Part shown: one piece after another, positions 481-25,842 of the stretch
How positions within the stretch are numbered: position 1 is the first letter of the stretch
How the letters are laid out: each line of letters starts with the position of its first letter
Assembly: GCF_006345805.1 (NCBI RefSeq)
Contig: NW_021834744.1
Span: 1 to 26,628, forward strand
Direction: 5' to 3'
DNA: 26,628 bases
DNA from: Octopus sinensis
Taxonomy: Eukaryota
Made by a program: the position numbers and the translations under genes
Notes under the pieces: model-generated
What the model was told of the DNA's origin: nothing
The model's database searches: none
The model's input: the letters and a program-made list of their open reading frames with translations, nothing else

Positions 481-955
481 AGTTTTCCTTCATGGCAGAA
501 TTTATAGTCAAGACTAAGCATTTTATCTTATCAAATTTGTCCTATGGTTGCGGAACTGTTTCCGGAGTGAAAAACCATCTTTCAGGATGATAATGCATCA
601 ATTCAAGCAACTAAAGTTGTTACCGAACGACACGAGGAACATTCTAGTGAAGTTGAGCATCTTATCCGGTTAACAGAGTCCCCAGATCTCAATATTATTG
701 AACATTTATGGTGCATTTATAAGAAAAGAAAAACAAATAAAGAGTGGTTATCCTCCACCATAATCTCTACAAGAACCGGAGATTGTTTTAGCTGAAGAAT
801 GGACAAAAATTCCTTCAGAAACAATTCAAAATTTGTACGACACAATACCTCATTGAATTCAAGGTGTAATTATTGCACAAGGCGGTCCTACTTCATATTA
901 TAATAAATTTGTTTGAAATTTGAAAGTGTTTCCATCATTTTCTCCAAGCCGTGTA
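481..955 (+). mobile_element. Decayed Tc1-like transposon 3' half (DD36E spacing) with right TIR and TA
   Basis: The frame from 541 reads ...IFQDDNASIQATKVVTERHEEHSSEVEHLIRLTESPDLNIIEHLW, with an in-frame TGA at 568-570. The C-terminus GGPTSY* ends near 901. TIR-like gtgtttccatcattttctccaagccgtg is followed by TA at 954-955. Confidence 0.9.
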
Positions 956-1321: not shown

Positions 1322-1386
<65 letters not shown>

Positions 1387-1396
1387 ATATAGAAGG

Positions 1397-1447
1397 AGCT
1401 TCTACAGGACTAGTACTGTTTCATTCAAGAGAAATCTTCAGGAAGCT
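1397..1447 (-). ncRNA. Type I hammerhead ribozyme motif (type A)
   Basis: Minus strand: AGCUUC-CUGAAGA-UUUC(UCUU)GAAU-GAAA-CAG(UACUAGUC)CUG-UA|GAAGCU. It has a 6-bp stem I, the full core and a 4-bp stem III with a GUA triplet. Confidence 0.75.
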
Positions 1448-1495
1448 TCCTGAAGATTTCTCTTGATATGAAACAGTACTAGTCCTGTAGAAGCT
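1444..1495 (+). ncRNA. Type I hammerhead ribozyme motif (type A, 1-nt insertion in stem II)
   Basis: CTGAAGA 1450-1456, GAAA 1470-1473, GTA 1487-1489. Stem II 3' strand reads GATAT instead of GAAT. Confidence 0.65.
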
Positions 1496-1692
1496 CCTTC
1501 TATATATAATAAATTAATTTTACTCTGCTATGTATTGAGTACCTTACTTACTGTGGTTAACCCGGATCAACCCGGGACCTACATATATATATATATATAT
1601 ATATAATATACATACATACATATACATATACTTATATATATACTATATATATATTATATATATATACATACATACATATACATTTATATACA

Positions 1693-3039: not shown

Positions 3040-3935
3040 GATACGATTACTTGAGGAAAGTTCGAATTAAATGTCAACGTTTAAAATGTGTGCATGTTTA
3101 TACCTAACGTAATATCTATTTACAAACGGTAGATGACTTCAGTTCTACGGTAAGAATGAAAGGAATCTCCGATCATTGTCAATTCCGTGAGTGTGTTTAT
3201 CAGTGACGTCAGAATTGAATATGGCATTTCTAAGTGTGGAATCTTTGTTAAGGAGGTAAAAGAAATACCATAAAAGTGAAGGAATAAATGATTGAATATG
3301 TTCACCGGGTGAGATACGGAAGCTCGACGGAGATAATGGGTAGGAATGAATATATGGACGTCGTGAAACCTGACAGTGTAAAGGATAAAGCATTGAAAGT
3401 GAAAGTAGAACACAATATTTCTGAAGGATTAGGAAAATATTATAAGAAATATTGAATTTCTAAATCTCTCGTAGAGACATGTACGGTGGTGGGGCGATAG
3501 AATGGTTGTATACTGTCAATCTAACAAGAACGTGACAGTAGGGGGTACACCACCGCTGTATAGCCCTAGGAAGCATCGAACGTCTCCTGATGGCTTTGAC
3601 ACATTTTTTCCCTCGGACAACGATCCTGAAACACGGTGTCCCTAGATGCAGTTCCGGCGGCCGGGGGTGTTTGTCTCCCCTTCGTATATGTATATAAGGA
3701 CACAGGGAAACATGTGTCAAAGCCATCAGGAGACGTTCGATGCTTCCTAGGGCTATACAGCGGTGGTGTACCCCCTACTGTCACGTTCTTGTTAGATTGA
3801 CAGTATACAACCATTCTAGGAAAATATTAAAATCCAAAATTAGTGGTGTAAATATCCTCACTGCAAAACATTCAAAATTCTTACCAATCTTTAAGTGCAG
3901 TGCCGAAATAAATATGCAAAGGGAAAAACATTGAG
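3040..3935 (+). mobile_element. Degenerate non-LTR reverse transcriptase fragment (R4/Dong-like), interrupted at 3443-3816
   Basis: Frameshifted peptides: GYDYLRKVRIK, VDDF/FYGKNE, NSVSVFISDVRIEYGISKCGIFV, DGDNG, RIRKIL. After the insertion it resumes as KILKSKISGVNILTA...PIFKCSAEIN, which resembles R4-clade KILKSKLNGGNxIxAIN...YSAGII. Confidence 0.7.
3443..3816. mobile_element. 374-bp insertion with 13-bp TSD and ~115-bp internal inverted repeat
   Basis: taggaaaatatta at 3430-3442 and 3817-3829. Arms 3498-3613 and 3704-3818 differ by about one substitution and one indel, with a 90-bp spacer. Confidence 0.85.
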
Positions 3936-4162: not shown

Positions 4163-4519
4163 TCTTTTTCTTCCTCATTTTCAAGATATTTCACTGCTTA
4201 TTCCACCACCAAGATGAAATAAACTTTGGGTGTGATTTTTTTATTTATATATTTTTCTGCCGACATTAAAAAAAATATTATTTGCATTCCTTTATTTTAT
4301 TGACCATTATAAAATCATTCACAAAACAAATGAGAAAAAAATGAAGGTGAAAGGAAAGAAATATTTAATTTTTTGTCATACAATACTGTATAAAAACCAT
4401 TTAAAAAAAAGAAAAAACCCACGGGCATATGGCGTAATGGTTAAGAGCGCGGGCTACTAACCACCCCCAAGATGCCGAGCTCGATTCCAGGCAGTGTCCT
4501 TACTACTAATAATAATAAT

Positions 4520-5997
4520 CTATCTATGGCAATCCCTCAAGGTCGAGGATGATGGTCTTCGCGCAAATTTATTGGTGAGTCCGCAGGTGACTGATAAGAC
4601 CAATTCTTGCTCGAAAACATCGGTCACAGTGCGGACATCTAGTGCCGGAAGGTTGTTGTTGGCGCTCCTTCCGTCGTCGTCTTTTCTCCTCCAGCTCTGC
4701 AGACCTTTTCGACTCGAAATTCGCCGTTCCCTCATGGATGGTGGTTTTCCAGCGTAGTCTGTTTTTTGCCGTTTCCTCCCAGTTGGTGAAGTCAATGTCA
4801 CACTTTTTGAGGTTCGATTTCAGGGAGTCCTTGTAGCGTTTCTTCTGGCCTCCTTTTGTACGCTTGCCGTCTTTGAGTTGGGAGTAGAAGATCTGTTTGG
4901 GAAGTCGTTCGTCAGCCATTCTAACCACGTGGCCGTTCCATCTTAGTTGGCCTTTGATGACATAGGCTTCGATGCTGGTCATTTTTGCTTCTTGTAGCAC
5001 GCTGACGTTAGTTCTTCTGTCTTCCCAGCTGATGTTGAGGATCTTCCGAAGACAGCGTTAGTGAAATTTCTCGAGCGTTTTCAGGTGGTGACTATACGGG
5101 GTCCAGGTTTCGGATGCGTAAAGGAGGGTTGGAATAATGACTGTCCTGTGCACCATGAGTTTGGTTTCGGTTCGGATGTCCCGATCAGCAAAAACTCTTG
5201 TTCGAAGCTTGCCGAAAACTGTTCCTGCACACTTCAGACGGTGTTGGATTTCATCGCTGAGGTCTACCTTTGCTGACAGATGGCTCCCAAGGTAGCAGAA
5301 GTGGTTCACATTTTCCAGTGGATTTCCTTCGAGTTGAATCGATGGCGGGTTGTCAACACGGGCATTGGGGGGGGGGAGGTTGGTAGAGTAAGTGAGTCTT
5401 CTTGATGTTGATGCTCAGTCCAAGTTTAGTATATGCATGATGAAAAGCATTTAGGATCTGTTGGAGGTGATCTTCTCTGTAAGCTGCTACACTGTTGTCG
5501 TCGGCATATTGGAACTCTAGCAAGCTTCGCACCATTGTCTTTGACGTACTTTTGAGGCGAGCGAGGTTGAAAAGCTTGCCGTCCATTCTGTACGAGATCT
5601 CGATGCCAGGTGGAAGGTCATCTCGTATGATGTGCAACACTGTCGCCATAAAGATGGTAAAGAGAGTTGGCGCTATCACGCAGCCTTGCTTCACTCCGGA
5701 GGTGACTTTAAAGGGCTCAGAACTGCCTCCGTCGGTCTGGACTCTGGCGTGCATATTGTCGTGGAGGAGTTTGAGGATCCGGATGAACTTATCTGGGTAT
5801 CCATACTGGGCGAAAATATCCAGAGGAGCTCTCGCGGACACGATCAAAGGCTTTGGATAGGTCGATAAAGGCCAAGTAGAGCGGTTGGTGTTGCTCACGA
5901 CATTTTTCTTGTAGCTGTCGCAGCATGAATATCATGTCGGTTGTGCTTCGTGATGGCTTAAAGCCGGTCTGTGTCTCAGGAAGGATCCTCTCTGACA
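4520..5997 (-). mobile_element. 5'-truncated, disrupted RTE-clade LINE (RT, thumb, C-terminal CCHH finger, 3' UTR)
   Basis: QTGFKPSRSTTDMIFMLRQLQEKCREQHQPLYLAFIDLSKAFDRV, GVKQGCVIAPTLF, FQYADD, YLGS, WNGHVVRMADERLPKQIFY, CPHCDRCFRARIGLISHLRTH. Frameshifts near 5825 and the G-run at 5367-5378; in-frame stop at 5058-5060. Confidence 0.96.
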
Positions 5998-5999
5998 TA

Positions 6000-6034
<35 letters not shown>

Positions 6035-6083
6035 AATAATGATAATAATGATAATAATGATAATAATAATAATAGTAATAATA
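5998..6083. repeat. (TAA/TGA)n trinucleotide tract internal to SINE D
   Basis: Directly visible; source of the poly-Ile ORFs. Confidence 0.95.
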
Positions 6084-6133
6084 ACATTGAAAAATACCTT
6101 AGGAATGAGAACCCAGGTTCGAAATTTGCTCAA

Positions 6134-6179
6134 GACACCTGATGAAGGCTGGAGGGTATATCAGCGGCAACGTTGTGTT
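6134..6179 (+). ncRNA. Degenerate minimal type I HHR in the SINE D tail
   Basis: GACAC-CTGATGA-A-GGCTG(GAGGGTATAT)CAGCG-GCAAC-GTT-GTGTT. Stem I GACAC/GUGUU is present, but GAAA has become GCAA and the base of stem II is mismatched. Confidence 0.6.
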
Positions 6180-6899
6180 AACAACAAACAAGATGAGGAC
6201 AAATATCCGTCAAATGTAAATAAAGTAAATAATGTACAGCTAGGATTATCAGACATGAACTAGATACTTGAAGAGGAGAAATAGCATTGTGCCGTAGGCT
6301 ACAAATAGCAAGCCCTCTACTCATGGAATATTCCAGGTGTTCTAAGAAAACACCTGAGCTAAAAGAGCAATGATAATGGTTTCTAATATTCAGGTGTGGT
6401 ATTGGTGACCAATTGTTCAGAATATTTGAGCAAATCTGTTGAAAATTCAAGTAAGCACGGTAAATAATTAACGGGAAAAGAAGGCAAGAAAAGGAAAAGC
6501 AGGGGAGAGAGGAATATTGAGTCTTATCGGAGAGTAATATCGGAAGGGTTGATGGGCAGTTATTAATGTTTATATGCTGGCTGACCTTTGGAATTGTATA
6601 GAGGTTTGATGATAAATTGTAAGTTACAAATTGTGCGGTCAAGTATTCATTTTCACTCCGGCCATGGGCATTGCAGGGAAAGTGACGGAATGTAGGAGAA
6701 ATAAAGTTTAGTTTCACACCATTAAATTTTTCAATTAATCAACTACACCATAGAGATTATATGCGGAAGATAGACAAATTAAGTGTTATGTAGAAGGATC
6801 ACGGTTAAATTCACTCGAGATAAGGGGCTTCTGTTTACGTTGTATTGTCGGGAAGACAAGACAATTTCAAAACATGAGGACTTTATCTTGTATGTTAGA

Positions 6900-8485: not shown

Positions 8486-8657
8486 ATATATAGACCTGAG
8501 TAAACACATAAATGTGAAACAAGGTGAAAAAAGAGTACTCAAATACCAGTGGTAGAGTAATATGCTTTATTTTAAGCAGCAGAAAACTGTCTGATGAACG
8601 GCAACGAGAAACTCAGAGTAACAGATTTTGTTGAATTTTCTGCTGCTTAAAATAAAG
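8486..8657. mobile_element. Inverted Penelope-like terminal module (type B) between TA arrays
   Basis: Perfect 22-bp inverted repeat at 8565-8586 and 8636-8657 encloses an HHR. The left arm extends a further ~80 bp. Confidence 0.75.
8583..8629 (+). ncRNA. Type I hammerhead ribozyme motif (type B)
   Basis: AAAACTGT-CTGATGA-ACG(GCAA)CGA-GAAA-CTC(A)GAG-TA|ACAG(A)TTTT. The core is intact, with a GNRA loop II, a 1-nt loop III and an A-A mismatch at the base of stem II. Confidence 0.75.
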
Positions 8658-8689
<32 letters not shown>

Positions 8690-8902: not shown

Positions 8903-9419
8903 CTGTTTGCTTTTTTAACATTTTATGAGCACATTATTGTATATTATTGGTTCTATAGATATTCATTTTTGTTAGCAAGCAAAATTAATTTTAGTTATCT
9001 ATACTATTCTAATTATAGAATATTCGTAAGCATAAATTTTCTGGAAATATAATTATTCAATATGTTCCAATTTATTCCATTCAGTTACAATAAATGCAAA
9101 AATTATATGGTTATATTTATTATTGTATATCATGAAAGATATGTTTTTTAATAGATGATTAATCCCACCAAATCGATATATCTTCGTACTACACAAATAA
9201 ATTTTGCAGTTATACTGACGAACACTTATTAGTATGAAATGGTGCTATACACGATTAGCTATGATCAGAAATTCTATGTTTTTAACTACAATTGATTAAA
9301 TGCAGAATACGCAAGATATTTGAGGAGCGGTTTATGTTTATAAAAAAAATACAGATATATAATAACTGTATTTATTAAAAATACTATGAGGATAAAAATA
9401 AACCTTCTTTTCTATAATG

Positions 9420-10440
9420 TTATTCAATAAAGCCATCTTCAGTTTCAACAACTGCTTCTGTATGAGATCTAAATCATCTACATGCTCGAATCAAGTGGCC
9501 CTAATTCCTTTTAGAAATTACTCTGAATATGGAACATTTCATAGAATCTTTCGTACTCTGGGCGTGTACTTTGACCTCTCTCTCAACAACGCTCTACGTG
9601 TAATAGTCCAATGGATTGAGATCTGGGGAATTAGGAGGCAAAATGTTAGCAGCTATGTGATCATCCATTCAGCCATCCATTCCTGTGTTACTAGAGCTAT
9701 ATGTGATAGTGCAGAGTCTTACTGAAACACATATGGCCTTCCATTGCATACACTGTCTATCCGGGGATTAGCAATTATTTTCAGGACCTCAAGGTAGGTG
9801 GCAGAGTCAACTCTTAGACCTTGTGGTAAGAAGTAAGGAGGCATCACATATCCTTCATTACTGCCAACTCCTAAAACCATGACAGTTGCAGGAACTTTTG
9901 TGTGCACAACACTTGGAACTTCAGAAGTCTCTGCACACAAGCACCGGTCATTTCTTCTGTTAACTTTCTGATCTTGGTCGAGGTTTTTCGCGCTTGAGCA
10001 AAACAAAATCAATTCTGCTGGATTTTTCAGTTTGTTTAAGTGTCTTTTAGATCTGATGTAATGATTTTCTTTTGCTTTTTCGGACAAACAAACCTTTCCT
10101 CATCATATAAGATTTATAACTGATATCTTCGTAGACAACATTTCTGAATGTTCCTACTGGCACATGGAGATCTTTTGTAATTTACCTCATGGACTTTCTG
10201 GCATTGTAATCAATGGTTTGTTGAACTTGCTGGATAAATTCAGGTGTTCTGGTGATTTCAGAGCGTTTAGAATGCTTTTCATGCTTTGATATTGGGGAAA
10301 CCTTTTCCATCTTCAGTCTCTAGCGCCTTACAAACTATGTAAACGAAAGATCTGGCAAATTTTAAAACTCGAGATATTTCTATTAGTTTGTTCTGAAAAT
10401 AATGATCGCTCTACGTGTCGTGTTTTGAAATGCAATTTCA
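9420..10440 (-). mobile_element. Decayed mariner-like transposase (maT/DD37D-like)
   Basis: RTPEFIQQVQQTID, DQKVNRRNDR, TKVPATVMVLGV, YVFQ*DSA, PPNSPDLNPLDYY and a terminal GFIE*. Several stops and frameshifts; TIRs not located. Confidence 0.88.
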
Positions 10441-11788: not shown

Positions 11789-11837
<49 letters not shown>

Positions 11838-11862
11838 AGTGTGTGTGTGTGTGTGTGTGTGT
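11665..11862. repeat. (TATG)n/(TA)n/(TG)n compound microsatellite
   Basis: Directly visible. Confidence 0.95.
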
Positions 11863-12024
11863 AGGCGCAGGAGTGGCTGTGTGGTAAGTGACTTGCTTAC
11901 CAGCCACATGTTCCGGGTTCAGTACCATTGCGTGGCACCTTGGCAAGTGTCTTCTACTATAGCCTCGGGCCGACCAAAGCCTTGTTAGAGGATTTGGTAG
12001 ACGGAAACTGAAAGAAGCCTGTCG
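11863..12024 (+). mobile_element. 5' half of SINE family B
   Basis: aggcgcaggagtggctgtgtggtaag...ggttcagtacc...ccttggcaagtgtcttc...gaagcctgtcg matches the heads at 20100-20271 and 22055-22218. It ends in the family's internal TA tract. Confidence 0.88.
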
Positions 12025-12046
12025 TATATATGTGTATATATATTAT

Positions 12047-12082
<36 letters not shown>

Positions 12083-12097
12083 TTATTATATAGAAGG

Positions 12098-12148
12098 AGC
12101 TTCTACAGGACTAGAACTGTTTCATTCAAGAGAAATCTTCAGGAAGCT
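12098..12148 (-). ncRNA. Type I hammerhead ribozyme motif (type A) at the left end of the 6.4-kb inverted repeat
   Basis: Exact reverse complement of 18435-18485. Confidence 0.75.
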
Positions 12149-12301
12149 AGTTAACAAGAATTGTATTGGCATTTATACATTTAGGCAGGTTTAAAGGGGT
12201 GTTGGTGGGGGACTTTTTGGGGGTAGGCATAGCGCAAAATATCATACTTGGGGGAGTGGTCAGGGAGTCAGTGTTAAATTACATAGAAAAAAAAAAGAAA
12301 A

Positions 12302-12333
<32 letters not shown>

Positions 12334-13403
12334 GAAAAAATGGGGGAGTAGAGTGTTAGGTAAATAAGGAGATTCTCACTTATACCTATGCACATATGTA
12401 TACATATATACACAAACATACAAACATATATACATATACATACACACATACATACACACACATATATATACATATATATACACTTACACATACCTATACA
12501 TATCTACACATACACATATATGTATACATACACACACTCACATGCATACACGTACACACATGTATATATACACACACGACCACACATAATATACACAAGA
12601 AATATATATACACATACACACACATAGTCACATACACGCATACACACACATATCCACACACACACATGCACACACAGCACACTAGTCCCTATATACACAT
12701 ATATACACATACACACATATATACATACACACGCATACAATACAATACTATATATATAATATATATATATACATATGTGTACCTATGCATACCTACACAT
12801 ACACACATATATATATATATACACATACAAATACAGACCCATCCCTAATTTTAATTTTATTATCTTCGTTTATTACTTTTGTTATCTTTGGCCGCTTGGT
12901 CACAAACATCTTGGCTATGACAGCCAGTCCATATATCTGTCTACTGGGAAACAAGCACTCATTCACTCACGCACACTCTTTAGCACGTACACTCACTCAT
13001 TCGTACACTCACACATAACACGCACGCACGCGTTATATTCATACATACATACATCTACATACATTCACGTATATAACACATACGTACGCGTACTACAGAT
13101 TCATGTCTATACTTAGAAGGCTAGTCTATACATATACACCAATAAATATAAATACACACACATACATATACACCTACATACAAATACATACATGTATATA
13201 TATATATATATAATATATATATATATATAATTCACATATATATACATATATATATATATACACATATATACACACATACACACATATACATATATATACA
13301 CACATACACATACCAAATACACACATACACATACATACGTATACATACATCCATACATACATACATTTATACACATACACACACCCAGATACATACATAT
13401 ATA

Positions 13404-13436
<33 letters not shown>

Positions 13437-13814
13437 TACATTCACACACACACATACATATACATACACATACATAACAATATACGCACACACATACATA
13501 CATACACATACACGCACCTACACATGTACATGCGTACCCATACACACACACACACACACGCGCGCATCCATATATACAATAAGTACACACATGCGTAAAA
13601 GTATACATATATCTATGCTTACACATACACACACACACACGCGCCTCCTTATATTCATACTTACATGCATACTCAAAAATAAGTAAATAGTAAAATATAT
13701 ATACGCGCAGTTATTCATACATGCATACTCAAAAAATAAATAATAAATATTAAGTATATGTACGTTGCAGTTACCTATTATATAGACGGATACATACATA
13801 TAACTTACACACAC

Positions 13815-13845
<31 letters not shown>

Positions 13846-14136
13846 CATACATATATACACATATATATACATATACATATATACACATATATATACACAC
13901 ACACACATACACATATATATATATATACATACTTACACACATGTACAAATATATACACACATAGATAACTCTACGTACCTACATATACATAAACACACGA
14001 GCGTTCGCGTATATGTACATATACACATACACATACACACGCATATATATACATACATACATACACATACACACATATATACACACACACATACACACAT
14101 ATATACACACACACACATACACACATATATATATAC

Positions 14137-14189
<53 letters not shown>

Positions 14190-14414
14190 CACACACATAT
14201 ACATGTGTGCAAACATACATACATACTCATACAAGCACACACACTTACACACATATATACATACACATATACATACATACATACATATATGCATACATAC
14301 ACACACACACATATATTATATATACATACATACACATACACATACCTATAACATATAATTACACACATATATATACACATGCACATTCTTATATCTCTAC
14401 ATTACTCGCACTAT

Positions 14415-14459
<45 letters not shown>

Positions 14460-15207
14460 CATATACACACACTTACATATATATACACATCTACAATTTG
14501 TATCTACACTCACATACATGCACATACACATAACTCTACATACATACTATACATCGACATACTTCGCGTACACTCATATATATACACATATACATATACA
14601 CACACACATACATATACATATATATATACATAAATATATCATATATAATACACATATACCACACACATACATATTATATATATATATATAATACACAAAC
14701 ACACACACACACAACACACACACACACATACATATATATACATACCTACACATATACATACATGTACATATATATATACACACACATATATACATACACA
14801 CACATACATATATCAACAATTGAGGGTAAAGTTAATTAGTTATTAATCAATTTCACCAAGTATTCAGTATGTAAAAGGACCATTATTTTTTTAAGGAGAG
14901 GGCCTTAACAAAATCTCAGAACACTCCCCAAATTGTATGCATAAGAAGTATGCGAACTACAAGAACTATAGACCTACCCGGCAACCAGATTGATGACACC
15001 CCACCCACAAACCCCCCCCCCAATCCCACCGTTCCCCTAGCACCCCCGATTACCTTTTCTCCTAAGACCTTTCACATATGTGTATGTGCACGCTTGTATA
15101 TGTGTATCGTATATATGTATAGAAATGGGGTATAGTAGGAATATACGCATGTATTATGTGTGTGTGCGTGTGTATGTATGTAAAAATATATATATATATG
15201 TATGTGC

Positions 15208-15238
<31 letters not shown>

Positions 15239-15596
15239 TATATGTATGTATGTATAAATGTATATATGTGTGTATGCATATGTATGTGTATATGTATGTG
15301 TGTATGTATGTGTATGTATGTATAAAATATTATATAATTAGGGCTTAGTAAAATAAATTACTTTGCCACATACTGAACTTTCTAGAAATAGCAGCCAAAT
15401 AAGTTTTTTAGCCTCTTCCACTACTTAGAGAATATCTTCCCTCAGACACTGTTTACTCAAAAAAATAATGGTCCTTTTACATACTGAATACTTGGTGAAA
15501 TTGATTAATAACTAATTAACTTTACCCTCAATTGTTGATATATGTATGTGTGTGTATATATATATGTACATGTATGTATATGTGTATGTATGTATG

Positions 15597-15627
<31 letters not shown>

Positions 15628-15628
15628 T

Positions 15629-15671
<43 letters not shown>

Positions 15672-15728
15672 ATATGTGTATTATATATGTATATATTTAT
15701 GTATATATATATGTATGTGTGTGTGTTT

Positions 15729-15764
<36 letters not shown>

Positions 15765-15994
15765 ATATGTGTATTATATATGTATATATTTATGTATATA
15801 TATATGTATATGTATATGTATGTGTATATGTATATATGTGTATATATATGAGTGTACGCGAGTATGTCGATGTATATGTAGGTATGTAGAGTTATGTGTA
15901 TGTGCATGTATGTGAGTGTAGTAGATACAAATTGTAGATGTGTATATATATGTAAGTGTATATATACATGTATATAGGTATATGTATGTGTGTG

Positions 15995-16040
<46 letters not shown>

Positions 16041-17135
16041 GCGAGTATGTAGAGATATAAGTATGTGCATGTGTATATATATGTGTGTATATATATATAG
16101 GTATGTGTATGTGTATGTATGTATATATATATATGTGTGTGTGTATGTATGCATATATGTATGTATGTATATGTGTATGTGTAAGTGTGTGTAAGTGTGT
16201 GTATATATGTAAATGTAAGTGTGTGTGCTTGTATGAGTATGTATGTATGTTTGCACACATGTATATGTGTGTGTATGTGTATATATATATATATATGTAT
16301 ATATATATAAGTATATATATATGTATATATATATAAGTATATATATATGTATATATATATAAGTATATATATATGTATATATATATAAGTATATATATAT
16401 ATGTGTATATATATAAGTATATATATATGTGTATATGTGTGTGTGTGTATATATGTGTATATGTGTGTATGTGTATGTATGTATGTATATATATGCGAAC
16501 GCTCGTGTGTTTATGTATATGTAGGTACGTAGTTATCTATGTGTGTATATATTTGTACATGTGTGTAAGTATGTATATGTGTGTATGTGTGTGTGTAAGT
16601 ATGTATATGTGTATGTGTGTGTGTGTATATATATGTGTATATATGTATATGTATAATATGTGTATATATGTATGTATATATATGTATATGTATATATATG
16701 TGTATATATGTATGTATATATATATAATATAATATATATATATATAATATATTATATATATATGTGTGTTGTAAGTTTATATGTATGTATCCGTCTATAA
16801 ATAGGTAACTGCACGTACATATACTTAATATTTATATTTATTTTTTGAGTATGCATGTATGAATAACTGCGCGTATATATATTTTACTATTTACTTATTT
16901 TTTGAGTATGCATGTAAGTATGAATATAAGGAGGCGCGTGTGTGTGTGTGTATGTGTAAGCATAGATATATGTATACTTTTACGCATGTGTGTACTTTTG
17001 TGTATATATGGATGCGCGCGTGTGTGTGTATGGGTACGCATGTACATGTGTATGTGCGTGTATGTGTATATGAGTATGTATGTATGTGTGTGCGTATATT
17101 TGTATATGTATGTATGTATATGTATGTGTGTGTGA

Positions 17136-17178
<43 letters not shown>

Positions 17179-17316
17179 TATATATGTATGTATCTGGGTG
17201 TGTGTATGTGTATAAATGTATGGATGTATGTATGTATGTATACGTATGTATGTGTATGTGTGTATATGTATGTATGTGTATGTGTGTATATATATGTATA
17301 TGTGTGTATGTGTGTA

Positions 17317-17365
<49 letters not shown>

Positions 17366-18434
17366 GTGTATTGTATGTATGTAGGTGTATATGTATGTGT
17401 GTGTATTTTATTTATTGGTGTATATGTATAGACTAGCCTTCTAAGAGTATAGACATGAATCTGTAGGTACCGCGTACGTATGTGTATATACGTGAATGTA
17501 TGTAGATGTATGTATGTATGAATATAACGCGTGCGTGCGTGCGTGTAGTGGATGAGTGTACGAATGAGTGAGTGTACGTGCTAAAGAGTGTGCGTGAGTG
17601 AGTGATGAGTGCTTGTTTTCCAGTAGACAGATATATGGACTGGCTGTCATAGCCAAGATGTTTGTGACAAGCGGCCAAAGATAACAAAAGTAATAAACGA
17701 AGATAATAAAATTAAAATTAGGGAATGGGTCTGTATTTGTAGTGTATATATATATATGTGTGTATGTGTAGGTATGCATAGGTACACATATGTATATATA
17801 TATATATATATATATGTATTGTATATGTATGTGTGTGTATGTATATATGTGTGTATGTGTAATATGTGTATATAGGGACTAGTGTGCTGTGTGTGCATGT
17901 GTGTGGTGTGGATATGTGTGTGTGTATTCGTGTATGTGAGTATTGTGTGTTATGTGTATATATATTTTTCTGTGTGTATATGTATGTGTGGTCGTGTGTG
18001 TATATATACATGTGTGTATACGTGTATGCATGTGAGTGTGTGTATGTATACATATATGTGTATGTGTAGATATGTATATGTATGTGTAAGTGTATATATA
18101 TGTATATATATGTGTGTGTATGTATGTGTGTATGTATATGTATATATGTTTGTATGTGTGTGTATATATGTATACATATGTGCATAGGTATAAGTGAGAA
18201 TCTCCTTATTTACCTAACACTCTACTCCCCCATTTTTTCTATATATATATTTTTTATATATATTTTTTTATTTTATTTTTTTTTTTATTTATTCTTCTAT
18301 CTAATTTAACACTGACTCCCTGACCATTCCCCCAAGTATGATATTTTGCGCTATGCCTACCCCCAAAACGTCCCCCACCAACACCCCTTTAAACCTGCCT
18401 AAATGTATAAATGCCAATACAATTCTTGTTAACT

Positions 18435-18485
18435 AGCTTCCTGAAGATTTCTCTTGAATGAAACAGTTCTAGTCCTGTAGAAGCT
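18435..18485 (+). ncRNA. Type I hammerhead ribozyme motif (type A) at the right end of the 6.4-kb inverted repeat
   Basis: AGCTTC-CTGAAGA(18441-47)-TTTC(TCTT)GAAT-GAAA(18460-63)-CAG(TTCTAGTC)CTG-TA|GAAGCT; predicted cleavage after 18479. Confidence 0.75.
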
Positions 18486-18570
18486 CCTTCTATATAATAA
18501 ATTAATTTTACTCTGCTATGTATTGAGTACCTTATTTACTGTGGTTAACCCCGAATCAACCCGGGACTAC
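18486..18570 (+). mobile_element. Type A terminal tail with AATAAA and terminal CCCG/CGGG hairpin, then (TA)n
   Basis: Nearly identical to 1496-1582. Confidence 0.8.
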
Positions 18571-18599
18571 TATATATATATATATATATATATATTATG

Positions 18600-18678
18600 T
18601 GTGTGTATATGTTTGCGTGGTTGTTTGATAAATTGTCGAACCCTCATACGTCGTTTAACAACGGGAGAGTCCATCATA
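18600..18678 (+). mobile_element. Isolated 3' end of SINE tail W
   Basis: gtcgaaccctcatacgtcgtttaacaacgggagagtccat resembles the reverse complement of 1731-1770. Confidence 0.5.
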
Positions 18679-18685
18679 GTTACAC

Positions 18686-19199
18686 AGATAGATAGATTGA
18701 TAGATAGATAGATAGATAGGTAGGTAGGTAGGTAGGTAGGTAGGTAGGTAGATAGATAAATAGATAGATAGATAGGTAGGTAGGTAGATAGATAGATAGG
18801 TAGATAGGTAGGTTGCAAGGTAGGTGGATGGATGGATGGACGGATGGATGGATGGATGGTAAGTAAGTAAGGCGGCGAGCTCGTAGAAACGTTTGCATGC
18901 CGGGCGAAATGCTTAGCGGTATTTCGTCTGCGTTACGTTGTGAGTTCAAATTCCGCCGAGGTCGACTTTGCCTTTCATCCTTTCGGGATCGATAAATTAA
19001 GTACCAGTTACGCACTGGGGTCGATGTAATCGACTTAATACCTATGTCTGTCCTTGTTTGTCCCCTCTGTGTTTAGCCCCTTGTGGGTAATAAAGAAATA
19101 GATAGATAGATAGTAGATAGATAGATAGATGGATGGATAGATAAATAGATAGATGGATGGATAGATAAATAGATGGATAGATAGATAGATAAATAGATG

Positions 19200-19235
<36 letters not shown>
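18686..19235. repeat. (GATA)n/(GGTA)n/(GGAT)n tetranucleotide array split by a SINE
   Basis: Directly visible at 18686-18870 and 19097-19235. Confidence 0.95.
18871..19100 (+). mobile_element. Full-length SINE family C
   Basis: Head ggcggcgagctcgtagaaac with B-box-like gagttcaaattcc, core gcctttcatcctttcgggatcgataaattaagtaccag and tail ...taataaagaaata. Confidence 0.88.
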
Positions 19236-21134: not shown

Positions 21135-21137
<3 letters not shown>

Positions 21138-21436
21138 CCCAGTAATTAGGGGAGCGGACTCGCGGTTGTAGGATCGTGGTTTCTATCCCTAGACCGGCCG
21201 TTGTGAGTGTTTATTGAGCGAAAACACCTAAAAGTTCCACGAGGCTCCGGCAGGGGGTGGTGGTAATCCCTGCTGTCCTCTTTCGCCACAACTTTCTCTC
21301 ACTCTTTCTTCCGTTGGCCTGCTCGCTTAGCCAGCGGGGTGGCGTCATTTGAAGGCTAAAACAATGTGAAGCGCATTGTGACCAGCGATATGTAGCAACA
21401 CCTGATAGCCAAGTCGGTCACGGTGATCGCGGTGAT
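21135..21436 (+). mobile_element. OR-like SINE with a third tail (type Z)
   Basis: Same head and body as 23653-23830, then an unrelated tail ggcctgctcgcttagccagc...cacggtgatcgcggtgat. Confidence 0.8.
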
Positions 21437-21791
21437 ATATATATATATAATTTCTGTTTTTAATACTTTTAATACATGATTATATCTACAGGCAATCAAG
21501 CATTGATTGAAAGATCACTAAGTTTTATCTAATGATTTCATTTCTACAATAAACGGTCTTAAAAGCTGCAACTGTTTAAGGGGTTACAAGATGCATCAGT
21601 TGCGGCTATACACACAGGCACACGTACGTGCGCATACATATAAAAATAGAAAGAGAGAGAGAGAAAGAAAGTGAGTGAGAGACAGAGGAAGGGAATGAGC
21701 GAGAGGGATAAAAGACGAGTAAACAGCGAGACAGATGAACAAATGGAAGAAAAGACTTCTCAACAAGTTTAGGCAAACTTTGGTATTTGTA

Positions 21792-22007
21792 TTTACTCTT
21801 TACCCTTTTACTCTTTTACTTGTTTCAGTCGTTTGACTGCGGCCATGCTGGAGTACCGCCTTTAATCGAGCAAATCAACCCCGGGACTTATTCTTTTGTA
21901 AGCCCAGTACTTATTCTATCGGTCTCTTTTGCCGAACCGCTAAGTAACGGGGACATAAACACACCAGCATCGGTTGTCAAGCAATGCTAGGGGTACAAAC
22001 ACACACA

Positions 22008-22053
<46 letters not shown>

Positions 22054-22218
22054 TCGACGGGCTTCTTTCGGTTTTCGTCTACCAAATCCACTCACAAGGC
22101 TTTGGTCGGCCCGAGGCTATAGTAGAAGACGCTCGCTAAAGGTTCCACGCAGTGGGACTGAACCTGGAACCATGTGTTTGGTAAACAAGCTACTTACCAC
22201 ACAGCCACTCCTGCGCCT
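21792..22218 (-). mobile_element. Full-length SINE family B
   Basis: Collinear with 19854-20271. Confidence 0.9.
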
Positions 22219-22898
22219 ATGTGTCACTATTTCCATGACGGTGAATTACCTCATGTGTCACATCCCTTTTTGATAATCCTTATTAGGTAGCAAAGCTCGT
22301 TTAATCATGCGAATCAGATTATGTTTTAGAGTCAGTATTCTAGCGAATTCTAGTTGCTGATAAATAGAGCCAATTCTCGTACAGTGTTAAATTGTATCTT
22401 CATTTAATTTCGTTAAATAATTTTACTGAATTTCCAAATGAGTTTTGAAAACTTAGTCGCCCATTAAACTTTTAGATTTAAGCTTATATACAATTGAGAT
22501 TTTTTCAAACAATTTCAGGTAATGCCTTTGTACATCTCTCTGCTGATATGAATAAAATATTTAAATCATAAATATATATTGAGAATGCATTCGTTTTTAT
22601 AAATGTTTGCGGAATCGGTCCACACGCTTCTGGGTCGTTTCTGTGGACGAAGAATATACTGGGCCCCAATTATATACGAAGAACATACATTTGAAAATTG
22701 ATTGGTATCTGCTTTTCCGTGTGACATAGGGCATCACAACGCCATCTATGAAAACCTGTACGATGCATTTTAGAAAAAGAAAACGTAAAGTATATCCACG
22801 TGGCTGTGCCGGAAGCCTCACTGCATCAAAAAACCCACAAGTACATCCGTAGAAATATCTGACTCACGAAAGTATTTCATTGTATGTATTACTGAGAT

Positions 22899-23217
22899 GT
22901 GGAAGCGCAATGACCCAGTGGTTAGGGCAGCGAACTCGCGGTCGGAGGATCGCGGTTTCGATTCCCAGACCGGGCGTTGTGTGTGTTTATAGAGCGAAAA
23001 CACCTAAAAGCTCCACGAGGCTCCGACAGTGGGTGGTGGCGACCCCTGTTGTTCTCTTTCGCCCCAACTCTCTCTCACTCTTCCTTCCTGTTTCTTGAGT
23101 AACGCTGCGATGGACTGACGTTGCGTCCAGCTGGGGGAGGATCACATACGCCACAGAAACCAGGGAAACCGGGCCCATGAGCCTGGCTAGGCTTGAAAAG
23201 GGCGCATAAATAAATAC
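22899..23217 (+). mobile_element. Full-length OR-like SINE (tail Y) with 11-bp TSD
   Basis: TSD attactgagat at 22888-22898 and 23218-23228; A and B boxes present. Confidence 0.92.
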
Positions 23218-23652
23218 ATTACTGAGATAACGTTGGAACAGAGTTAATTATCAAATTTAAATAAAAAACACACCTGCTGCCCTACTACAGATCTCTTCCA
23301 AGATCATTGAACGATTACATGACATTTTACAGACACTCTTCTTGTAAACACATTCTTATAGTTAAATCAAAAAGACGTATATTAAACAAACAACCCTGAA
23401 TGCGACATAAGACTGATAAAGGGTATCGACAAAAGCTTACAAGAAAACTCGTATTGGATGGTACGGTATTAACACTGAAGCAAGGGAGGTTTCACTTAGT
23501 TGAAGCTAGAAGGTCGCAAGGATCGTATTGATATTCGACACCCACGTCTCTGTTAAGGGCCACATATTTAATATTAAATTTTTCCAGACCTAAATGCACC
23601 AGTACACAACGGTGGTACAAACATTATTGAATGATACCATAGTACTGGGAAG

Positions 23653-24040
23653 TGGAGGCGCAATGGCCCAGTGGTTAGGGCAGCGGACTCTCGGTCGTAG
23701 GATCGCGGTTTCGATTCCCGGACCGGGCGTTGTGAGTGTTTATTGAGCGAAAACACCTAAAGCTCCACGAGGCTCCGGCAGGGGGTGGTGGTGATCCCTG
23801 CTGTACTCTTTCACCACAACTTTCTCTCTCACACTTACTTTCTGTTTCTGTTGTACCTGTATTTCAAGGGGCCGGCCTTGTCACTCTCTGTGTCACGCTG
23901 AATATCCCCGAGAACTACGTTAAGGGTACACGTGTCTGTGGAGTGCTCAGCCACTTACACGTTAATTTCACGAGCAGGCTGTTCCGTTGATTCGGATCAA
24001 CCGGAACACTCATCGTCGTAACCGACGGATGCTTCCATCC
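23653..24040 (+). mobile_element. Full-length OR-like SINE (tail X) with 12-bp TSD
   Basis: TSD agtactgggaag at 23641-23652 and 24041-24052; A box TGGCCCAGTGG, B box GGTTTCGATTCC. Confidence 0.93.
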
Positions 24041-25842
24041 AGTACTGGGAAGGAAAAGATAACTTACAAATTCATTGAATCCGATAAAGGTATAACATCG
24101 AAATAACTCCTCTTCAATGTTCTTTCAGAGCTTTATCACTATCATGAGCGACCTCGGCATTCAAGGAATTTTGAATGTTACGCAGTTCAGTTTTCTATCA
24201 CAATATGTCGACATGTCTCAAACGACAAGCTGATGTCCTAGTCGAGAAATATGGTATGCTGCCGAAGGAAAAAGATTTCGTTGGATTAGACCACATTTAA
24301 AAAATGTGTACTGTACGTATCTCGAGCGTATTCCCAGACGACCGCATCGAAATCCGAAGCAATTTTATCCTTGACACTGTCGACAAATGTAAGATACTTC
24401 AAACCGTCGGATGATAGTTTCTAATATATTGTCACAATTTAACCATTCTCAGCTTTGGGGTTGAGGATTTGATACTAGATACAGCTATAAAATATCGTTA
24501 AAGAAAAATTAAGTTTATTTAATTCTATTTAATTTAACTCATTTTAACTGTAGTAAACCTATTTACGGAATGGACTAGAGATCCGGTTAATTAATTTTAC
24601 ATGCAAATATTATATATTCAGTTAAACTACGCCGTCCCATCTTTCTCTACTTATATTAAACTATTATCCGTTCATAGTTTGACCGAAATCGCGATCCTCC
24701 GACCGCGATTCCGCTGCCCTAACCACTGGGCCATCGCAGTAATAGATACAATGAAATACTTTCGTGAGTCAAATATTTCTGCGATGTACTTGTGTTTTTT
24801 TTGATGCAGTGAGGCTTCCGGCACATCCACCTGGATATACTTTACGTTTTCTTTTTCTAAAATGCATCGTACAGGTTTTTATAGATGGCGTTGGGATGCC
24901 CTACGTCACACGGAAAAGCAGATACCAATCAATTTTCAAATGTATGTTCTTCGTATATAATTGGGGCCCCGGTATATTCTTCGTCCACAGAAACGACCCA
25001 GAAGCGTGTGGACCGATTCCGCAAACATTTATAAAAACGAATGCATTCTCAATATATATTTATGACTTTAAATATTTTATTCATATCAGCAGAGAGATGT
25101 ACAAAGGCATTACCTGAAGTTGTGTGAAATTTTAGTAATTTTCCTAAGACTTTGTTCTCGCAGGAAAACAAAATACACTCGACTGTTTGATGGTAACTTG
25201 ACAACCCAGGGCCCAGAATTTAGTAACCATACGATAAATGAAAGACGGTAATTTGATATGTCGATTACTTAGAAAAATTCTTCCGAAAATGTTTGTTAAA
25301 AAAATATGCGAAAAGACATCACCATAACATTACGATTCGAGGGAATGGTTCAGGGCTAATTACTTCATTAATTAGACGAATAACTGTTTAGTTTTTTTTA
25401 ATAGATTACGCATACGAGATGTATAACGATGAAAGAGTCCCCTAAGTCATTTGAACATTTGAAAGTGTTGTACATACGCATAAAGTTATGTAGAAATATA
25501 AATTATCATTCTTTTTCTTGTATGGCATACACATATACACACACAAGCACACACACACATACACACATACATCCGTACGTACATACATACATACATACAT
25601 GCATGCATGCATACATACACCGAGTAATGAGAGAGACAAAGTGAATGTTTAAACGGGTGCTGAAGATCGCTAACACAGGAGTGGTATAGATATCCTTCAA
25701 GTATGTCTCAGTTAAATCCGAAATTTAAACTCCAAATCCATCATCTGAGAGAGACGGTTCCGGTCCGGAAATTCGACTATAAGAATAGTCTCCGGGTATG
25801 GAAGTTAAATGGCAGATATATCCTCCTATTTCTACTTTTATA

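What the first reader, a model, noticed from the sequence alone, without database searches (positions are those of the whole stretch)
12081..18570. 6.4-kb foldback element capped at both outer ends by outward-facing hammerhead ribozymes
Seen: ~2.8-kb and ~3.0-kb arms, made of microsatellite-like sequence with unique islands, mirror each other around a 566-bp spacer. Each outer end carries the same 51-nt type I HHR, and only the right arm has an extra ~70-bp tail ending in (TA)n. Established: Penelope-like elements (PLEs) carry type I HHRs in their pseudo-LTRs, which can be inverted with one copy bearing a tail extension. Inference: this is a large non-coding, non-autonomous PLE-type element, or a host segment copied by PLE machinery. 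A transcript of either strand would self-cleave at its far end and could fold into a ~3-kb dsRNA hairpin. No clear RT or GIY-YIG ORF remains.
Basis: partly seen in the sequence, partly recalled or inferred. Interest (0 to 1): 0.85.

Follow-up and report, generated by a model that had tools for sequence, protein, structure and literature searches.

The report
Penelope-type head-to-head retroelement insertion
The 6.4-kb foldback is real and looks like a non-coding passenger sequence copied into a (TA)n repeat by Penelope-like retrotransposon machinery; this is a known kind of insertion, and its "hammerhead ribozymes" have the right catalytic core but remain unproven.

Summary
Arms 12077-14895 and 15456-18506 are inverted copies around a 560-bp spacer. 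Each outer end carries the same 51-nt hammerhead-like motif facing outward. Only the right end has a 64-bp tail (18507-18570), and (TA)n lies on both sides.

The main new evidence is a second, miniature insertion of the same family at 1381-1582. It consists of two ~66-bp 3' ends joined head-to-head at a palindromic AGCT, followed by the same tail, again inside (TA)n. So both insertions have 5'-truncated copies sharing one 3' end, an adjacent inverted copy, a one-sided tail and a microsatellite target. That is the published insertion signature of endonuclease-containing Penelope-like elements (PLEs). It argues against an assembly artefact or a foldback DNA transposon.

No PLE RT/GIY-YIG gene is present; the only RT in the window is LINE-type. 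The element is therefore non-autonomous.

The hammerhead call is weaker:
- The core, helix I (6 bp) and helix III (4 bp) are intact.
- Helix II is 3 bp with a U·U where G10.1-C11.1 is normally conserved.
- Rfam finds nothing.
- The ribozyme fold is not the predicted minimum.
- A hairpin transcript would sequester it.

Verdict: a new member of a known kind, of moderate interest.

The parts
12025..12076 (.). Left (TA)n-rich target tract. It is the internal microsatellite or tail of a SINE-like repeat at 11862-12020.
   Evidence: TRF row 12025-12092; sequence; SINE paralogues
12077..14895 (-). Inverted, 5'-truncated copy of the element (2819 bp). It keeps the 3' end but lacks the tail.
   Evidence: blastn and global alignment to the reverse complement of 15456-18506
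12098..12148 (-). Hammerhead-like motif of the inverted copy, identical to the one at 18435-18485.
   Evidence: Descriptor scan; alignment
14896..15455 (+). Spacer. It is most simply read as the extra 5' part of the longer (+) copy, because its simple sequence (15080-15325) is TG-type like the right arm. A small AAGG...CCTT inverted repeat sits at the junction.
   Evidence: Sequence; no other copy in the window; the assignment to the right copy is inference
15456..18506 (+). Right arm. With the spacer it forms the main copy, 14896-18506 (~3.6 kb). The body is non-coding and TG/TA-rich with unique islands. The 3' module at ~18190-18506 holds a T-rich tract, a C-rich unique segment, the hammerhead-like motif and a UA-rich tract.
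18435..18485 (+). Hammerhead-like motif. Helix I is AGCUUC/GAAGCU (6 bp). The core is CUGAAGA...GAAA. Helix II is UUC/GAA closed by U·U. Helix III is ACAG/CUGU with loop UUCUAGUC. The implied cleavage follows GUA, between 18479 and 18480.
   Evidence: Manual reading; descriptor scan with 0 of 300 shuffles giving a hit; core pattern 6 hits vs 0.10 expected; no Rfam hit
18476..18494 (+). Competing 8-bp hairpin (UGUAGAAG/CUUCUAUA) that spans the implied cleavage site. It is present in the predicted minimum-energy fold in place of helix I.
18507..18570 (+). One-sided 64-bp tail. It is 95% identical to the tail of the mini copy.
18571..18595 (.). Right (TA)n target tract, followed by (TG)n.
   Evidence: TRF; joined flanks compared with SINE paralogues
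1381..1445 (-). Mini insertion: inverted copy of the last ~66 bp of the element, carrying the hammerhead-like motif at 1397-1447(-). No tail.
1446..1518 (+). Mini insertion: direct copy of the last ~70 bp. It is joined to the inverted copy at the palindrome AGCT (1444-1447), which is the 5' edge of helix I. The motif at 1444-1495 has a 1-nt insertion in the 3' strand of helix II.
1519..1582 (+). Mini insertion: the same 64-bp tail, followed by (AT)n. (TA)n lies on the left at ~1325-1380.

Best explanation
The window holds two independent insertions of one non-autonomous retroelement family, made by the reverse transcriptase/GIY-YIG endonuclease of a Penelope-like element (PLE) acting in trans. 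One is 6.4 kb (12077-18570) and one is 0.2 kb (1381-1582).

**Shown**
- Each insertion consists of a direct copy and an adjacent inverted copy.
- Both copies are 5'-truncated to different extents (3.6 kb and 2.8 kb; ~70 bp and ~66 bp) and share the same 3' end.
- Only the direct copy carries a 64-bp tail.
- Both insertions sit in (TA)n.
- The two arms of each insertion share private variants, so they were made from one template at insertion.

**Inferred mechanism**
1. The endonuclease nicks a (TA)n tract.
2. The TA-rich 3'-OH anneals to a UA-rich stretch of the RNA, either after the tail or at the internal UAUAUAAUAAAUUAAU tract 64 nt upstream. It then primes cDNA synthesis.
3. A second priming event or self-priming/template switch produces the head-to-head partner. 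The mini copy has a palindromic AGCT at the junction, which fits this.

**Body and motif**
- The 3.6-kb TG/TA-rich body is non-coding. It is either this family's own body or host sequence carried along upstream of the 3' module.
- The hammerhead-like motif near the 3' end is the PLE-type ribozyme module. If it is active at all, it is probably weak.

**Consequence**
Any read-through transcript would form a long hairpin, which would hide the ribozyme.
For: **Second copy.** The mini insertion has the same architecture, tail and target.

**Arms come from one template.**
- Both big arms have U in loop 3 and both mini arms have A.
- The big arms are ~97.7% identical at aligned positions.
- Big and mini copies differ by ~5-6%.

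**Inverted-copy endpoints.** The inverted copies end inside the UA-rich tract at slightly different points in the two insertions. This fits microhomology priming.

**Hammerhead core pattern.**
- It is over-represented: 6 hits vs 0.10 expected.
- The full descriptor hits only this family, and 0 of 300 shuffles give a hit.

**Target site.** The joined flanks recreate the (TA)n(TG)n tract seen in uninterrupted SINE paralogues.

**Literature on PLE insertions.**
- They are 5'-truncated and often have an adjacent inverted 5'-truncated copy.
- They have a 30-40-bp tail at one end only, an HHR near the 3' end, and (TA)n target bias (PMC8557442).
- Also reported: a 31-bp tail on one of the inverted pLTRs, palindromes at inverted junctions read as self-priming, and head-to-head as the most frequent arrangement.
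- Terminal repeats are sufficient in cis to move unrelated, even non-coding, sequence in trans (PMC3846280).
- Paired min-HHRs on opposite strands occur in Schistosoma (PMC4209133).
Against: - **No PLE gene.** The window has no PLE RT or GIY-YIG ORF. The RT at ~4500-6800(-) is LINE-type. No autonomous partner with a matching 3' end could be sought.
- **No direct pLTR.** There is no tandem direct pseudo-LTR.
- **Tail length.** The tail is 64 bp, against the published 30-40 bp.
- **Hammerhead-like motif.**
  - Rfam does not recognise it.
  - It lacks the G10.1-C11.1 pair and the long helix II typical of PLE min-HHRs.
  - It is not the favoured fold.
  - One of the four copies has an indel in helix II.
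- **Sample size and TSDs.** Only two insertions are available. Target-site duplications cannot be read inside (TA)n.
- **Antisense poly(A).** The strand antisense to the motif carries a 33-nt A run (12287-12319), which is unexplained.
Confidence: 0.7

Rival explanations
1. A foldback- or MITE-type DNA transposon with long terminal inverted repeats made of simple sequence. It inserts at TA, and the mini copy is an internally deleted derivative.
For: Long inverted arms rich in simple repeats around a unique loop resemble Drosophila FB elements (my own knowledge). The flanks are TA-rich. The mini copy is a near-perfect 66-bp hairpin.
Against: The true ends are not inverted repeats of each other. 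Both insertions have the same 64-bp tail at one end only. The arms are not regular sub-repeat arrays: TRF gives 62-72% matches with mixed periods. The inner ends of the copies vary while the outer (3') ends are fixed, which is the pattern of 5' truncation. No transposase is present.
Confidence: 0.08
2. The 6.4-kb palindrome is a long-read fold-back or chimeric assembly artefact built around a single real copy.
For: Differences between the arms are dominated by indels: 90 gap events, 41 of them 1 bp and many of those 1-vs-2 homopolymer changes in unique sequence, against 64 substitutions. This looks like consensus noise. PLE tandem/inverted structures are known to trouble assemblies (PMC8557442, PMC3846280).
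Against: The left arm stops at the element's own tail-less terminus and joins (TA)n and a SINE flank, as in the independent mini copy. The junction is asymmetric, with a 560-bp unique spacer rather than a point of symmetry. The same head-to-head design at a second locus shows it is a property of the family.
Confidence: 0.05
3. A host-driven palindromic duplication (replication fork-switch or fold-back repair) of a segment that happened to end in a solo element, unrelated to the insertion mechanism.
For: Large inverted duplications with a short unique centre arise this way (my own knowledge). The arms are nearly identical.
Against: It needs the duplication boundary to coincide with the element terminus minus the tail. 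It also needs the same coincidence at the mini locus, where the duplicated unit is only 66 bp.
Confidence: 0.05
4. A short retroposon family mobilised by a non-PLE (LINE-type) enzyme, in which the hammerhead-like core is a fortuitous or decayed motif without function.
For: A LINE RT is present in the window. There is no Rfam hammerhead hit. Helix II is weak and the ribozyme fold is disfavoured. An A-rich run lies on the antisense strand.
Against: LINE twin priming gives an inverted 5' segment joined to a non-overlapping 3' segment. It does not give two copies of the same 3' end (my own knowledge). There is no terminal poly(A) at either outer end. A one-sided tail, a palindromic junction and a (TA)n target are PLE traits. 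The chance of the full motif is <1/300 per window.
Confidence: 0.1

Closest known systems
Insertions of endonuclease-containing Penelope-like elements (Penelope/Poseidon, Neptune, Hydra, Naiad) and their non-autonomous or trans-mobilised derivatives (PMC8557442; PMC3846280)
   Same: 5'-truncated copies anchored at a common 3' end; an adjacent inverted copy in head-to-head orientation; a palindrome at the inverted junction (mini copy); a short tail at one end only; a (TA)n target; a hammerhead-type core near the 3' end on the sense strand; the ability to carry unrelated non-coding sequence.
   Different: No RT/EN ORF and no direct tandem pLTR. The inverted part is 2.8 kb, not a ~200-bp pLTR. 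The tail is 64 bp rather than 30-40 bp. The body is almost entirely microsatellite-like. The autonomous partner is unknown.
PLE minimal hammerhead ribozymes (Cervera & de la Pena 2014, PMC4209133)
   Same: Type I topology; intact CUGANGA/GAAA/UH core; a partly palindromic loop 3 (CUAG); paired motifs on opposite strands, as seen in Schistosoma; expected low activity as a monomer.
   Different: Helix III is 4 bp with an 8-nt loop rather than 0-2 bp. Helix II is only 3 bp, against 6-8 bp. U·U replaces the highly conserved G10.1-C11.1. An unpaired base lies on both sides of helix II rather than only 5'.
Naiad 'HHR_core' motifs (PMC8557442)
   Same: CUGANGA and GAAA are separated by 7-17 nt (here 12) near the 3' end of an element that targets (TA)n. 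Naiad remnants are reported in cephalopods.
   Different: This motif also has good helices I and III. Clade assignment is impossible without an RT.
Metazoan non-LTR retrozymes (PMC7229834; bioRxiv 10.64898/2026.07.22.740005)
   Same: Non-autonomous, non-coding, hammerhead-bearing, and thought to derive from PLE terminal regions.
   Different: Retrozymes are direct tandem repeats of ~170-400 bp that yield circular RNAs. Here the copies are inverted, there is no tandem array, and the unit is up to 3.6 kb.
Drosophila Foldback (FB) elements
   Same: Long inverted arms rich in simple repeats around a unique centre.
   Different: Asymmetric termini (one-sided tail), 5'-truncation pattern, no regular sub-repeat arrays, no transposase.

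Membership tests
Penelope-like element (autonomous) | ORF with PLE-type RT and GIY-YIG endonuclease | tested here: not met
   The element has no long ORF outside simple sequence. The only RT in the window (~4500-6800, minus strand) is LINE-type with a C-terminal C2H2.
PLE-type insertion (mobilised by PLE machinery) | Copies variably 5'-truncated but sharing one 3' end | tested here: met
   Four copies of 3.6 kb, 2.8 kb, ~70 bp and ~66 bp all end in the same 3' sequence.
PLE-type insertion (mobilised by PLE machinery) | Adjacent inverted 5'-truncated copy (head-to-head), often with a palindrome at the junction | tested here: met
   Both insertions have it. The mini junction is the palindrome AGCT. 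The big junction is asymmetric.
PLE-type insertion (mobilised by PLE machinery) | Short tail extension at one end only | tested here: met
   A 64-bp tail lies at 18507-18570 and 1519-1582 (95% identical) and is absent from both inverted copies. It is longer than the published 30-40 bp.
PLE-type insertion (mobilised by PLE machinery) | Microsatellite, typically (TA)n, target | tested here: met
   (TA)n lies on both sides of both insertions.
PLE-type insertion (mobilised by PLE machinery) | Direct pseudo-LTR (partial tandem) | tested here: not met
   No direct repeat of the 3' module occurs in the spacer or elsewhere.
PLE-type insertion (mobilised by PLE machinery) | 3' end shared with an autonomous PLE of the same genome | not testable with these tools
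   The source genome is not available. Collection scans and a peptide search found no other copies.
Hammerhead ribozyme, type I | Conserved core C3-U4-G5-A6-N7-G8-A9, G12-A13-A14, A15.1-U16.1, H17 | tested here: met
   CUGAAGA ... GAAA ... U-A is present in all four copies.
Hammerhead ribozyme, type I | Three helices around the core, with G10.1-C11.1 closing helix II | tested here: inconclusive
   Helix I is 6 bp and helix III is 4 bp. Helix II is 3 A-U/G-C pairs with U·U at 10.1/11.1, and one copy has an indel there.
Hammerhead ribozyme, type I | Match to the Rfam hammerhead covariance models | tested here: not met
   No hit at gathering score on the whole window. No hit at E<=10 on 18400-18520.
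Hammerhead ribozyme, type I | Covariation supporting the helices | not testable with these tools
   Only four copies from two events are available. The only changes are one loop substitution and one helix II indel.
Hammerhead ribozyme, type I | Self-cleavage | not testable with these tools
   This needs in vitro transcription. The predicted fold does not favour the ribozyme.
Metazoan non-LTR retrozyme | Direct tandem repeats of a ~170-400-bp hammerhead-bearing unit | tested here: not met
   The copies are inverted and there is no tandem array.
Foldback-type DNA transposon | Symmetric terminal inverted repeats reaching both ends, built of regular sub-repeats, with TSDs | tested here: not met
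   The right end extends 64 bp beyond the repeat in both insertions. Simple sequence in the arms is irregular. TSDs are unreadable in (TA)n.
LINE twin-priming inversion | An inverted 5' segment joined to a non-overlapping 3' segment with poly(A) | tested here: not met
   Both arms duplicate the same 3' end, and there is no terminal poly(A).

The most novel reading that the evidence does not exclude
This family may be a dedicated PLE parasite whose insertions are obligatorily head-to-head, so that every insertion creates a hairpin-RNA gene with a stem of 66 bp to 2.8 kb. Its transcripts would be trimmed by a relaxed hammerhead (U·U at 10.1/11.1) and fed into siRNA or A-to-I editing pathways. 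The tail-less inverted copy ending in a UA-rich tract would then directly show that PLE second-strand synthesis is primed by microhomology with the (TA)n target.
Probability: 0.1. Interest if true: 0.6.

Novelty: new member of a known kind. Interest (0 to 1): 0.35.

Why it matters
PLE integration is the least understood retrotransposition mechanism, and no in vitro system exists (PMC8557442). This window holds two insertions of one family. One is truncated almost to the ribozyme and the other carries 3.6 kb of non-coding cargo, and together they expose several junction details:
- a palindromic AGCT at the head-to-head join;
- inverted copies that end inside a UA-rich tract;
- a constant 64-bp tail.

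Genome-wide, these details could be counted to test the self-priming and microhomology-priming models. Such insertions also create long inverted repeats that can break assemblies and could produce dsRNA. As a single locus it is an ordinary example of a known phenomenon.

Tried and rejected
**Searches that found nothing or were uninformative**
- **Rfam, three ways**: whole window at gathering score, 11800-18900 at E<=10, and 18400-18520 at E<=10. None gave a hammerhead hit. The many mir-297/mir-466-type sub-threshold hits are artefacts of TG/TA simple sequence.
- **Other copies outside the window:** exact-pattern scans of viral contigs and metagenome contigs gave 0 hits. Searching the protein collection with a 46-aa ORF from the 3' module found nothing.
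- **Organism identity:** a search with the LINE C-terminus returned a LINE family spread across many animals, so it was uninformative. From memory, the SINE at 11862-12020 looks like an octopus SINE. This is unverified.
- **Hidden pLTR:** I looked for a direct repeat of the 3' module or tail in the spacer and found none.

**Readings rejected**
- **Helitron:** no 5'-TC and no CTRR 3' end with a subterminal hairpin.
- **LINE twin priming:** the arms overlap completely.
- **SINE with the poly(A) at 12287-12319 as its tail:** the mini copy keeps the wrong end for that.

**Other core-pattern hits**
- The hit at 792 (+) lies inside a mariner-like transposase remnant and lacks helices.
- The hit at 9395-9446 (-) has only a 2-bp helix II.

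Full report

Yes. With the low-complexity filter off, blastn aligns 12077-14813 to the reverse complement of 15654-18506 (85% identity over 2911 columns). It also aligns 14794-14895 to 15456-15557 (99%). The arms are therefore 12077-14895 (2819 bp) and 15456-18506 (3051 bp), around a 560-bp spacer.

GC skew changes sign at the centre, from about -0.5 to -0.8 on the left to +0.6 to +0.8 on the right. The arms are cryptically simple CA/TA and TG/TA sequence interrupted by unique islands.

A global alignment gives 2685 matches, 64 substitutions and 90 gap events. Of the gap events, 41 are single bases, and many of those are 1-versus-2 homopolymer changes inside unique sequence. This indel-dominated pattern looks like long-read consensus noise plus microsatellite slippage. 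The arms are probably even more alike than they appear.

The same 51 nt sit at 18435-18485 (+) and 12098-12148 (-), each reading outward. The right arm alone continues for 64 bp (18507-18570) before (TA)n. The left arm abuts (TA)n directly.

**2. The decisive new evidence: a second, miniature copy**

A self-comparison of the window found the element's termini again at 1381-1582. That locus reads, left to right:
- (TA)n;
- the reverse complement of the last ~66 bp of the element;
- the last ~70 bp in direct orientation;
- the same 64-bp tail (95% identical);
- (AT)n.

The two halves meet at the palindrome AGCT (1444-1447), which is also the 5' edge of helix I of the hammerhead-like motif. The locus folds as an almost perfect 66-bp hairpin (-119 kcal/mol, z = -19).

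The flanks beyond the microsatellites differ between the two loci, so these are separate insertions. Within each insertion the two arms share a private variant: U in loop 3 in both big arms, A in both mini arms. The arms of one insertion therefore come from one template, not from two independent hits.

Joining the flanks of the big insertion recreates the (TA)n(TG)n tract seen in uninterrupted paralogues of the flanking SINE-like repeat.

**3. What it is**

All four copies share one 3' end and differ in how far they extend 5': 3.6 kb, 2.8 kb, ~70 bp and ~66 bp. Each insertion pairs a direct copy with an adjacent head-to-head inverted copy. Only the direct copy has the tail. Both targets are (TA)n.

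The literature describes these same features for endonuclease-containing Penelope-like elements:
- strong 5' truncation;
- an inverted 5'-truncated copy next to the element;
- a 30-40-bp tail at one end only;
- hammerhead motifs near the 3' end;
- (TA)n preference (PMC8557442);
- a 31-bp tail on one of the inverted repeats;
- palindromes at inverted junctions, interpreted as self-priming, with head-to-head as the commonest arrangement;
- terminal repeats that suffice in cis to move unrelated, even non-coding, sequence in trans (PMC3846280).

Paired min-hammerheads on opposite strands were also noted in Schistosoma (PMC4209133).

The element has no RT or GIY-YIG ORF. The only RT in the window (~4500-6800, minus strand) is a frameshifted LINE with a C-terminal C2H2 finger. 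The element is therefore non-autonomous. Its body is either its own or host sequence carried along, and two copies cannot decide which.

**4. The hammerhead claim**

The motif reads AGCUUC-CUGAAGA-UUUCUCUUGAAU-GAAA-CAGUUCUAGUCCUG-UA|GAAGCU.

*For:*
- The core is complete.
- Helix I is 6 bp.
- Helix III is 4 bp with a partly palindromic loop (CUAG).
- The implied cleavage site is 18479/18480.
- A descriptor requiring helix I >=5 bp, helix II >=3 bp (tolerating a 10.1/11.1 mismatch) and helix III >=2 bp finds only this family. It finds nothing in 300 shuffled windows.
- The bare core pattern occurs 6 times against 0.10 expected.

The descriptor was written after seeing the motif, so these numbers are generous.

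*Against:*
- Rfam gives no hammerhead hit, even at E<=10 on a 121-nt slice.
- Helix II is only UUC/GAA, with U·U where PLE and canonical hammerheads conserve G10.1-C11.1.
- The mini direct copy has a 1-nt insertion in helix II.
- In context the ribozyme fold is 4-5 kcal/mol above the minimum. An 8-bp hairpin (18476-18494) competes for the 3' strand of helix I.
- Four copies from two events give no covariation information.

I conclude that it is a core-complete, PLE-positioned hammerhead-like module of uncertain and probably low activity. Published PLE min-hammerheads also cleave poorly in vitro.

**5. How it most likely works** (inference except where marked)

1. A PLE enzyme supplied in trans nicks (TA)n.
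2. The TA-rich 3'-OH anneals to a UA-rich part of the RNA and primes cDNA synthesis.
3. There appear to be two such priming sites: beyond the tail, and the internal UAUAUAAUAAAUUAAU tract 64 nt upstream. *Shown:* both inverted copies end inside that tract, at points a few bases apart. This would explain why the tail is one-sided.
4. The partner copy arises by priming from the other nick, or by self-priming or template switching. The palindromic AGCT junction of the mini copy fits the latter.

The copies extend 27-91 nt past the implied cleavage site. The template RNA was therefore not cleaved at this ribozyme, as is true for PLEs generally.

A transcript through either locus would fold into a long hairpin. 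In that state the ribozyme strand is base-paired to its complement.

**6. Rivals**

- **Foldback/MITE DNA transposon.** It is contradicted by the asymmetric, conserved tail, by the 5'-truncation pattern, and by the irregular simple sequence in the arms.
- **Assembly fold-back artefact.** It is made unlikely by the asymmetric 560-bp centre. The left arm also ends at the family's own tail-less terminus and joins normal flank. The same design recurs at a second locus. It still deserves read-level confirmation, because the assembly looks noisy.
- **Host palindromic duplication.** It needs two coincidences of boundary.
- **LINE-driven retroposon with a chance motif.** It does not explain duplicated 3' ends, the tail, or the absence of a terminal poly(A).

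**7. Comparison and novelty**

It works like, and is best filed as, a non-autonomous or trans-mobilised PLE-type insertion. It is not an autonomous PLE (no ORF), not a retrozyme (no tandem array) and not an FB element.

It is unusual in four respects:
- the 2.8-kb length of the inverted part;
- the almost wholly microsatellite-like body;
- the 64-bp tail;
- the non-canonical helix II.

These are variations within a known kind. Penelope elements and Rfam hammerhead hits are already reported in a cephalopod genome (PMC6962438). The window appears to be cephalopod, but only from my memory of the SINE.

**8. Limits**

No other copies could be retrieved. Family-wide architecture, the autonomous partner, covariation and activity all remain untested.

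Noticed in passing
window 8495-8657: A small unique insert sits between two (TA)n tracts. Its ends form a 25-bp stem (8561-8587 with 8634-8660; fold -37.7 kcal/mol, z = -6.9). Inside is a second hammerhead-like core, CUGAUGA-ACGGCAACGA-GAAA-CUCAGAGU-A at 8587-8624 (+). It has a 3-bp helix III, a 2-bp helix II flanked by A·A, and a 4-bp helix I that continues into the long stem. There is no Rfam hammerhead hit. It may be another PLE-derived short element.
   Followed up: partly
window ~4500-6800, minus strand: A frameshifted LINE-type reverse transcriptase (RVT_1, YADD box) with a conserved C-terminal region ending in a C2H2 zinc finger. Relatives are 50-70% identical in fish, lizard, mantis shrimp and many unnamed contigs. 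It is not PLE-type.
   Followed up: partly
window 11862-12020; 22230-21805 (-); 20280-19845 (-); also 1130-1319: Copies of a tRNA-like-headed SINE whose full form has two parts separated by an internal (TA)n(TG)n tract. Both PLE-type insertions sit in (TA)n tracts belonging to such repeats. From memory this SINE resembles the abundant octopus SINE; this is unverified.
   Followed up: partly
window ~700-900 (+): The translation resembles the C-terminal end of a Tc1/mariner transposase (...EEWTKIPSETIQNLYDTIP...). The CUGAAGA...GAAAC match at 792-822 lies inside it and is a chance hit.
   Followed up: no
window 3498-3613 vs 3818-3704: A 116-bp inverted repeat, 98% identical, with ~90 bp between the arms. 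It may be a MITE or a hairpin locus.
   Followed up: no
window 22503-22960 vs 25129-24684: A 460-bp inverted repeat pair at 93% identity, about 1.7 kb apart, in a nest of SINE-like repeats (21136-24734).
   Followed up: no
window 12077-18506 (arm comparison): Differences between the arms are mostly 1-2-bp indels, many in short homopolymers within unique sequence, with few substitutions. This suggests an unpolished long-read assembly. Small indels anywhere in this window should be treated with caution.
   Followed up: partly
window 12287-12319 (+) / 18232-18307 (+): A 33-nt A run on the strand antisense to the hammerhead-like motif, which is T-rich on the sense strand. It is the most divergent part of the outer arms. 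Its origin is unexplained.
   Followed up: no
window 18686-18860 and 19098-19235: Long (AGAT)n/(TAGG)n/(ATAG)n tetranucleotide arrays just right of the insertion.
   Followed up: no
window 11800-18900: There are more than 200 sub-threshold Rfam 'miRNA' matches (mir-297, mir-466, mir-1277, mir-3149). All lie in TG/TA simple sequence and all score well below the gathering score. They are composition artefacts.
   Followed up: yes
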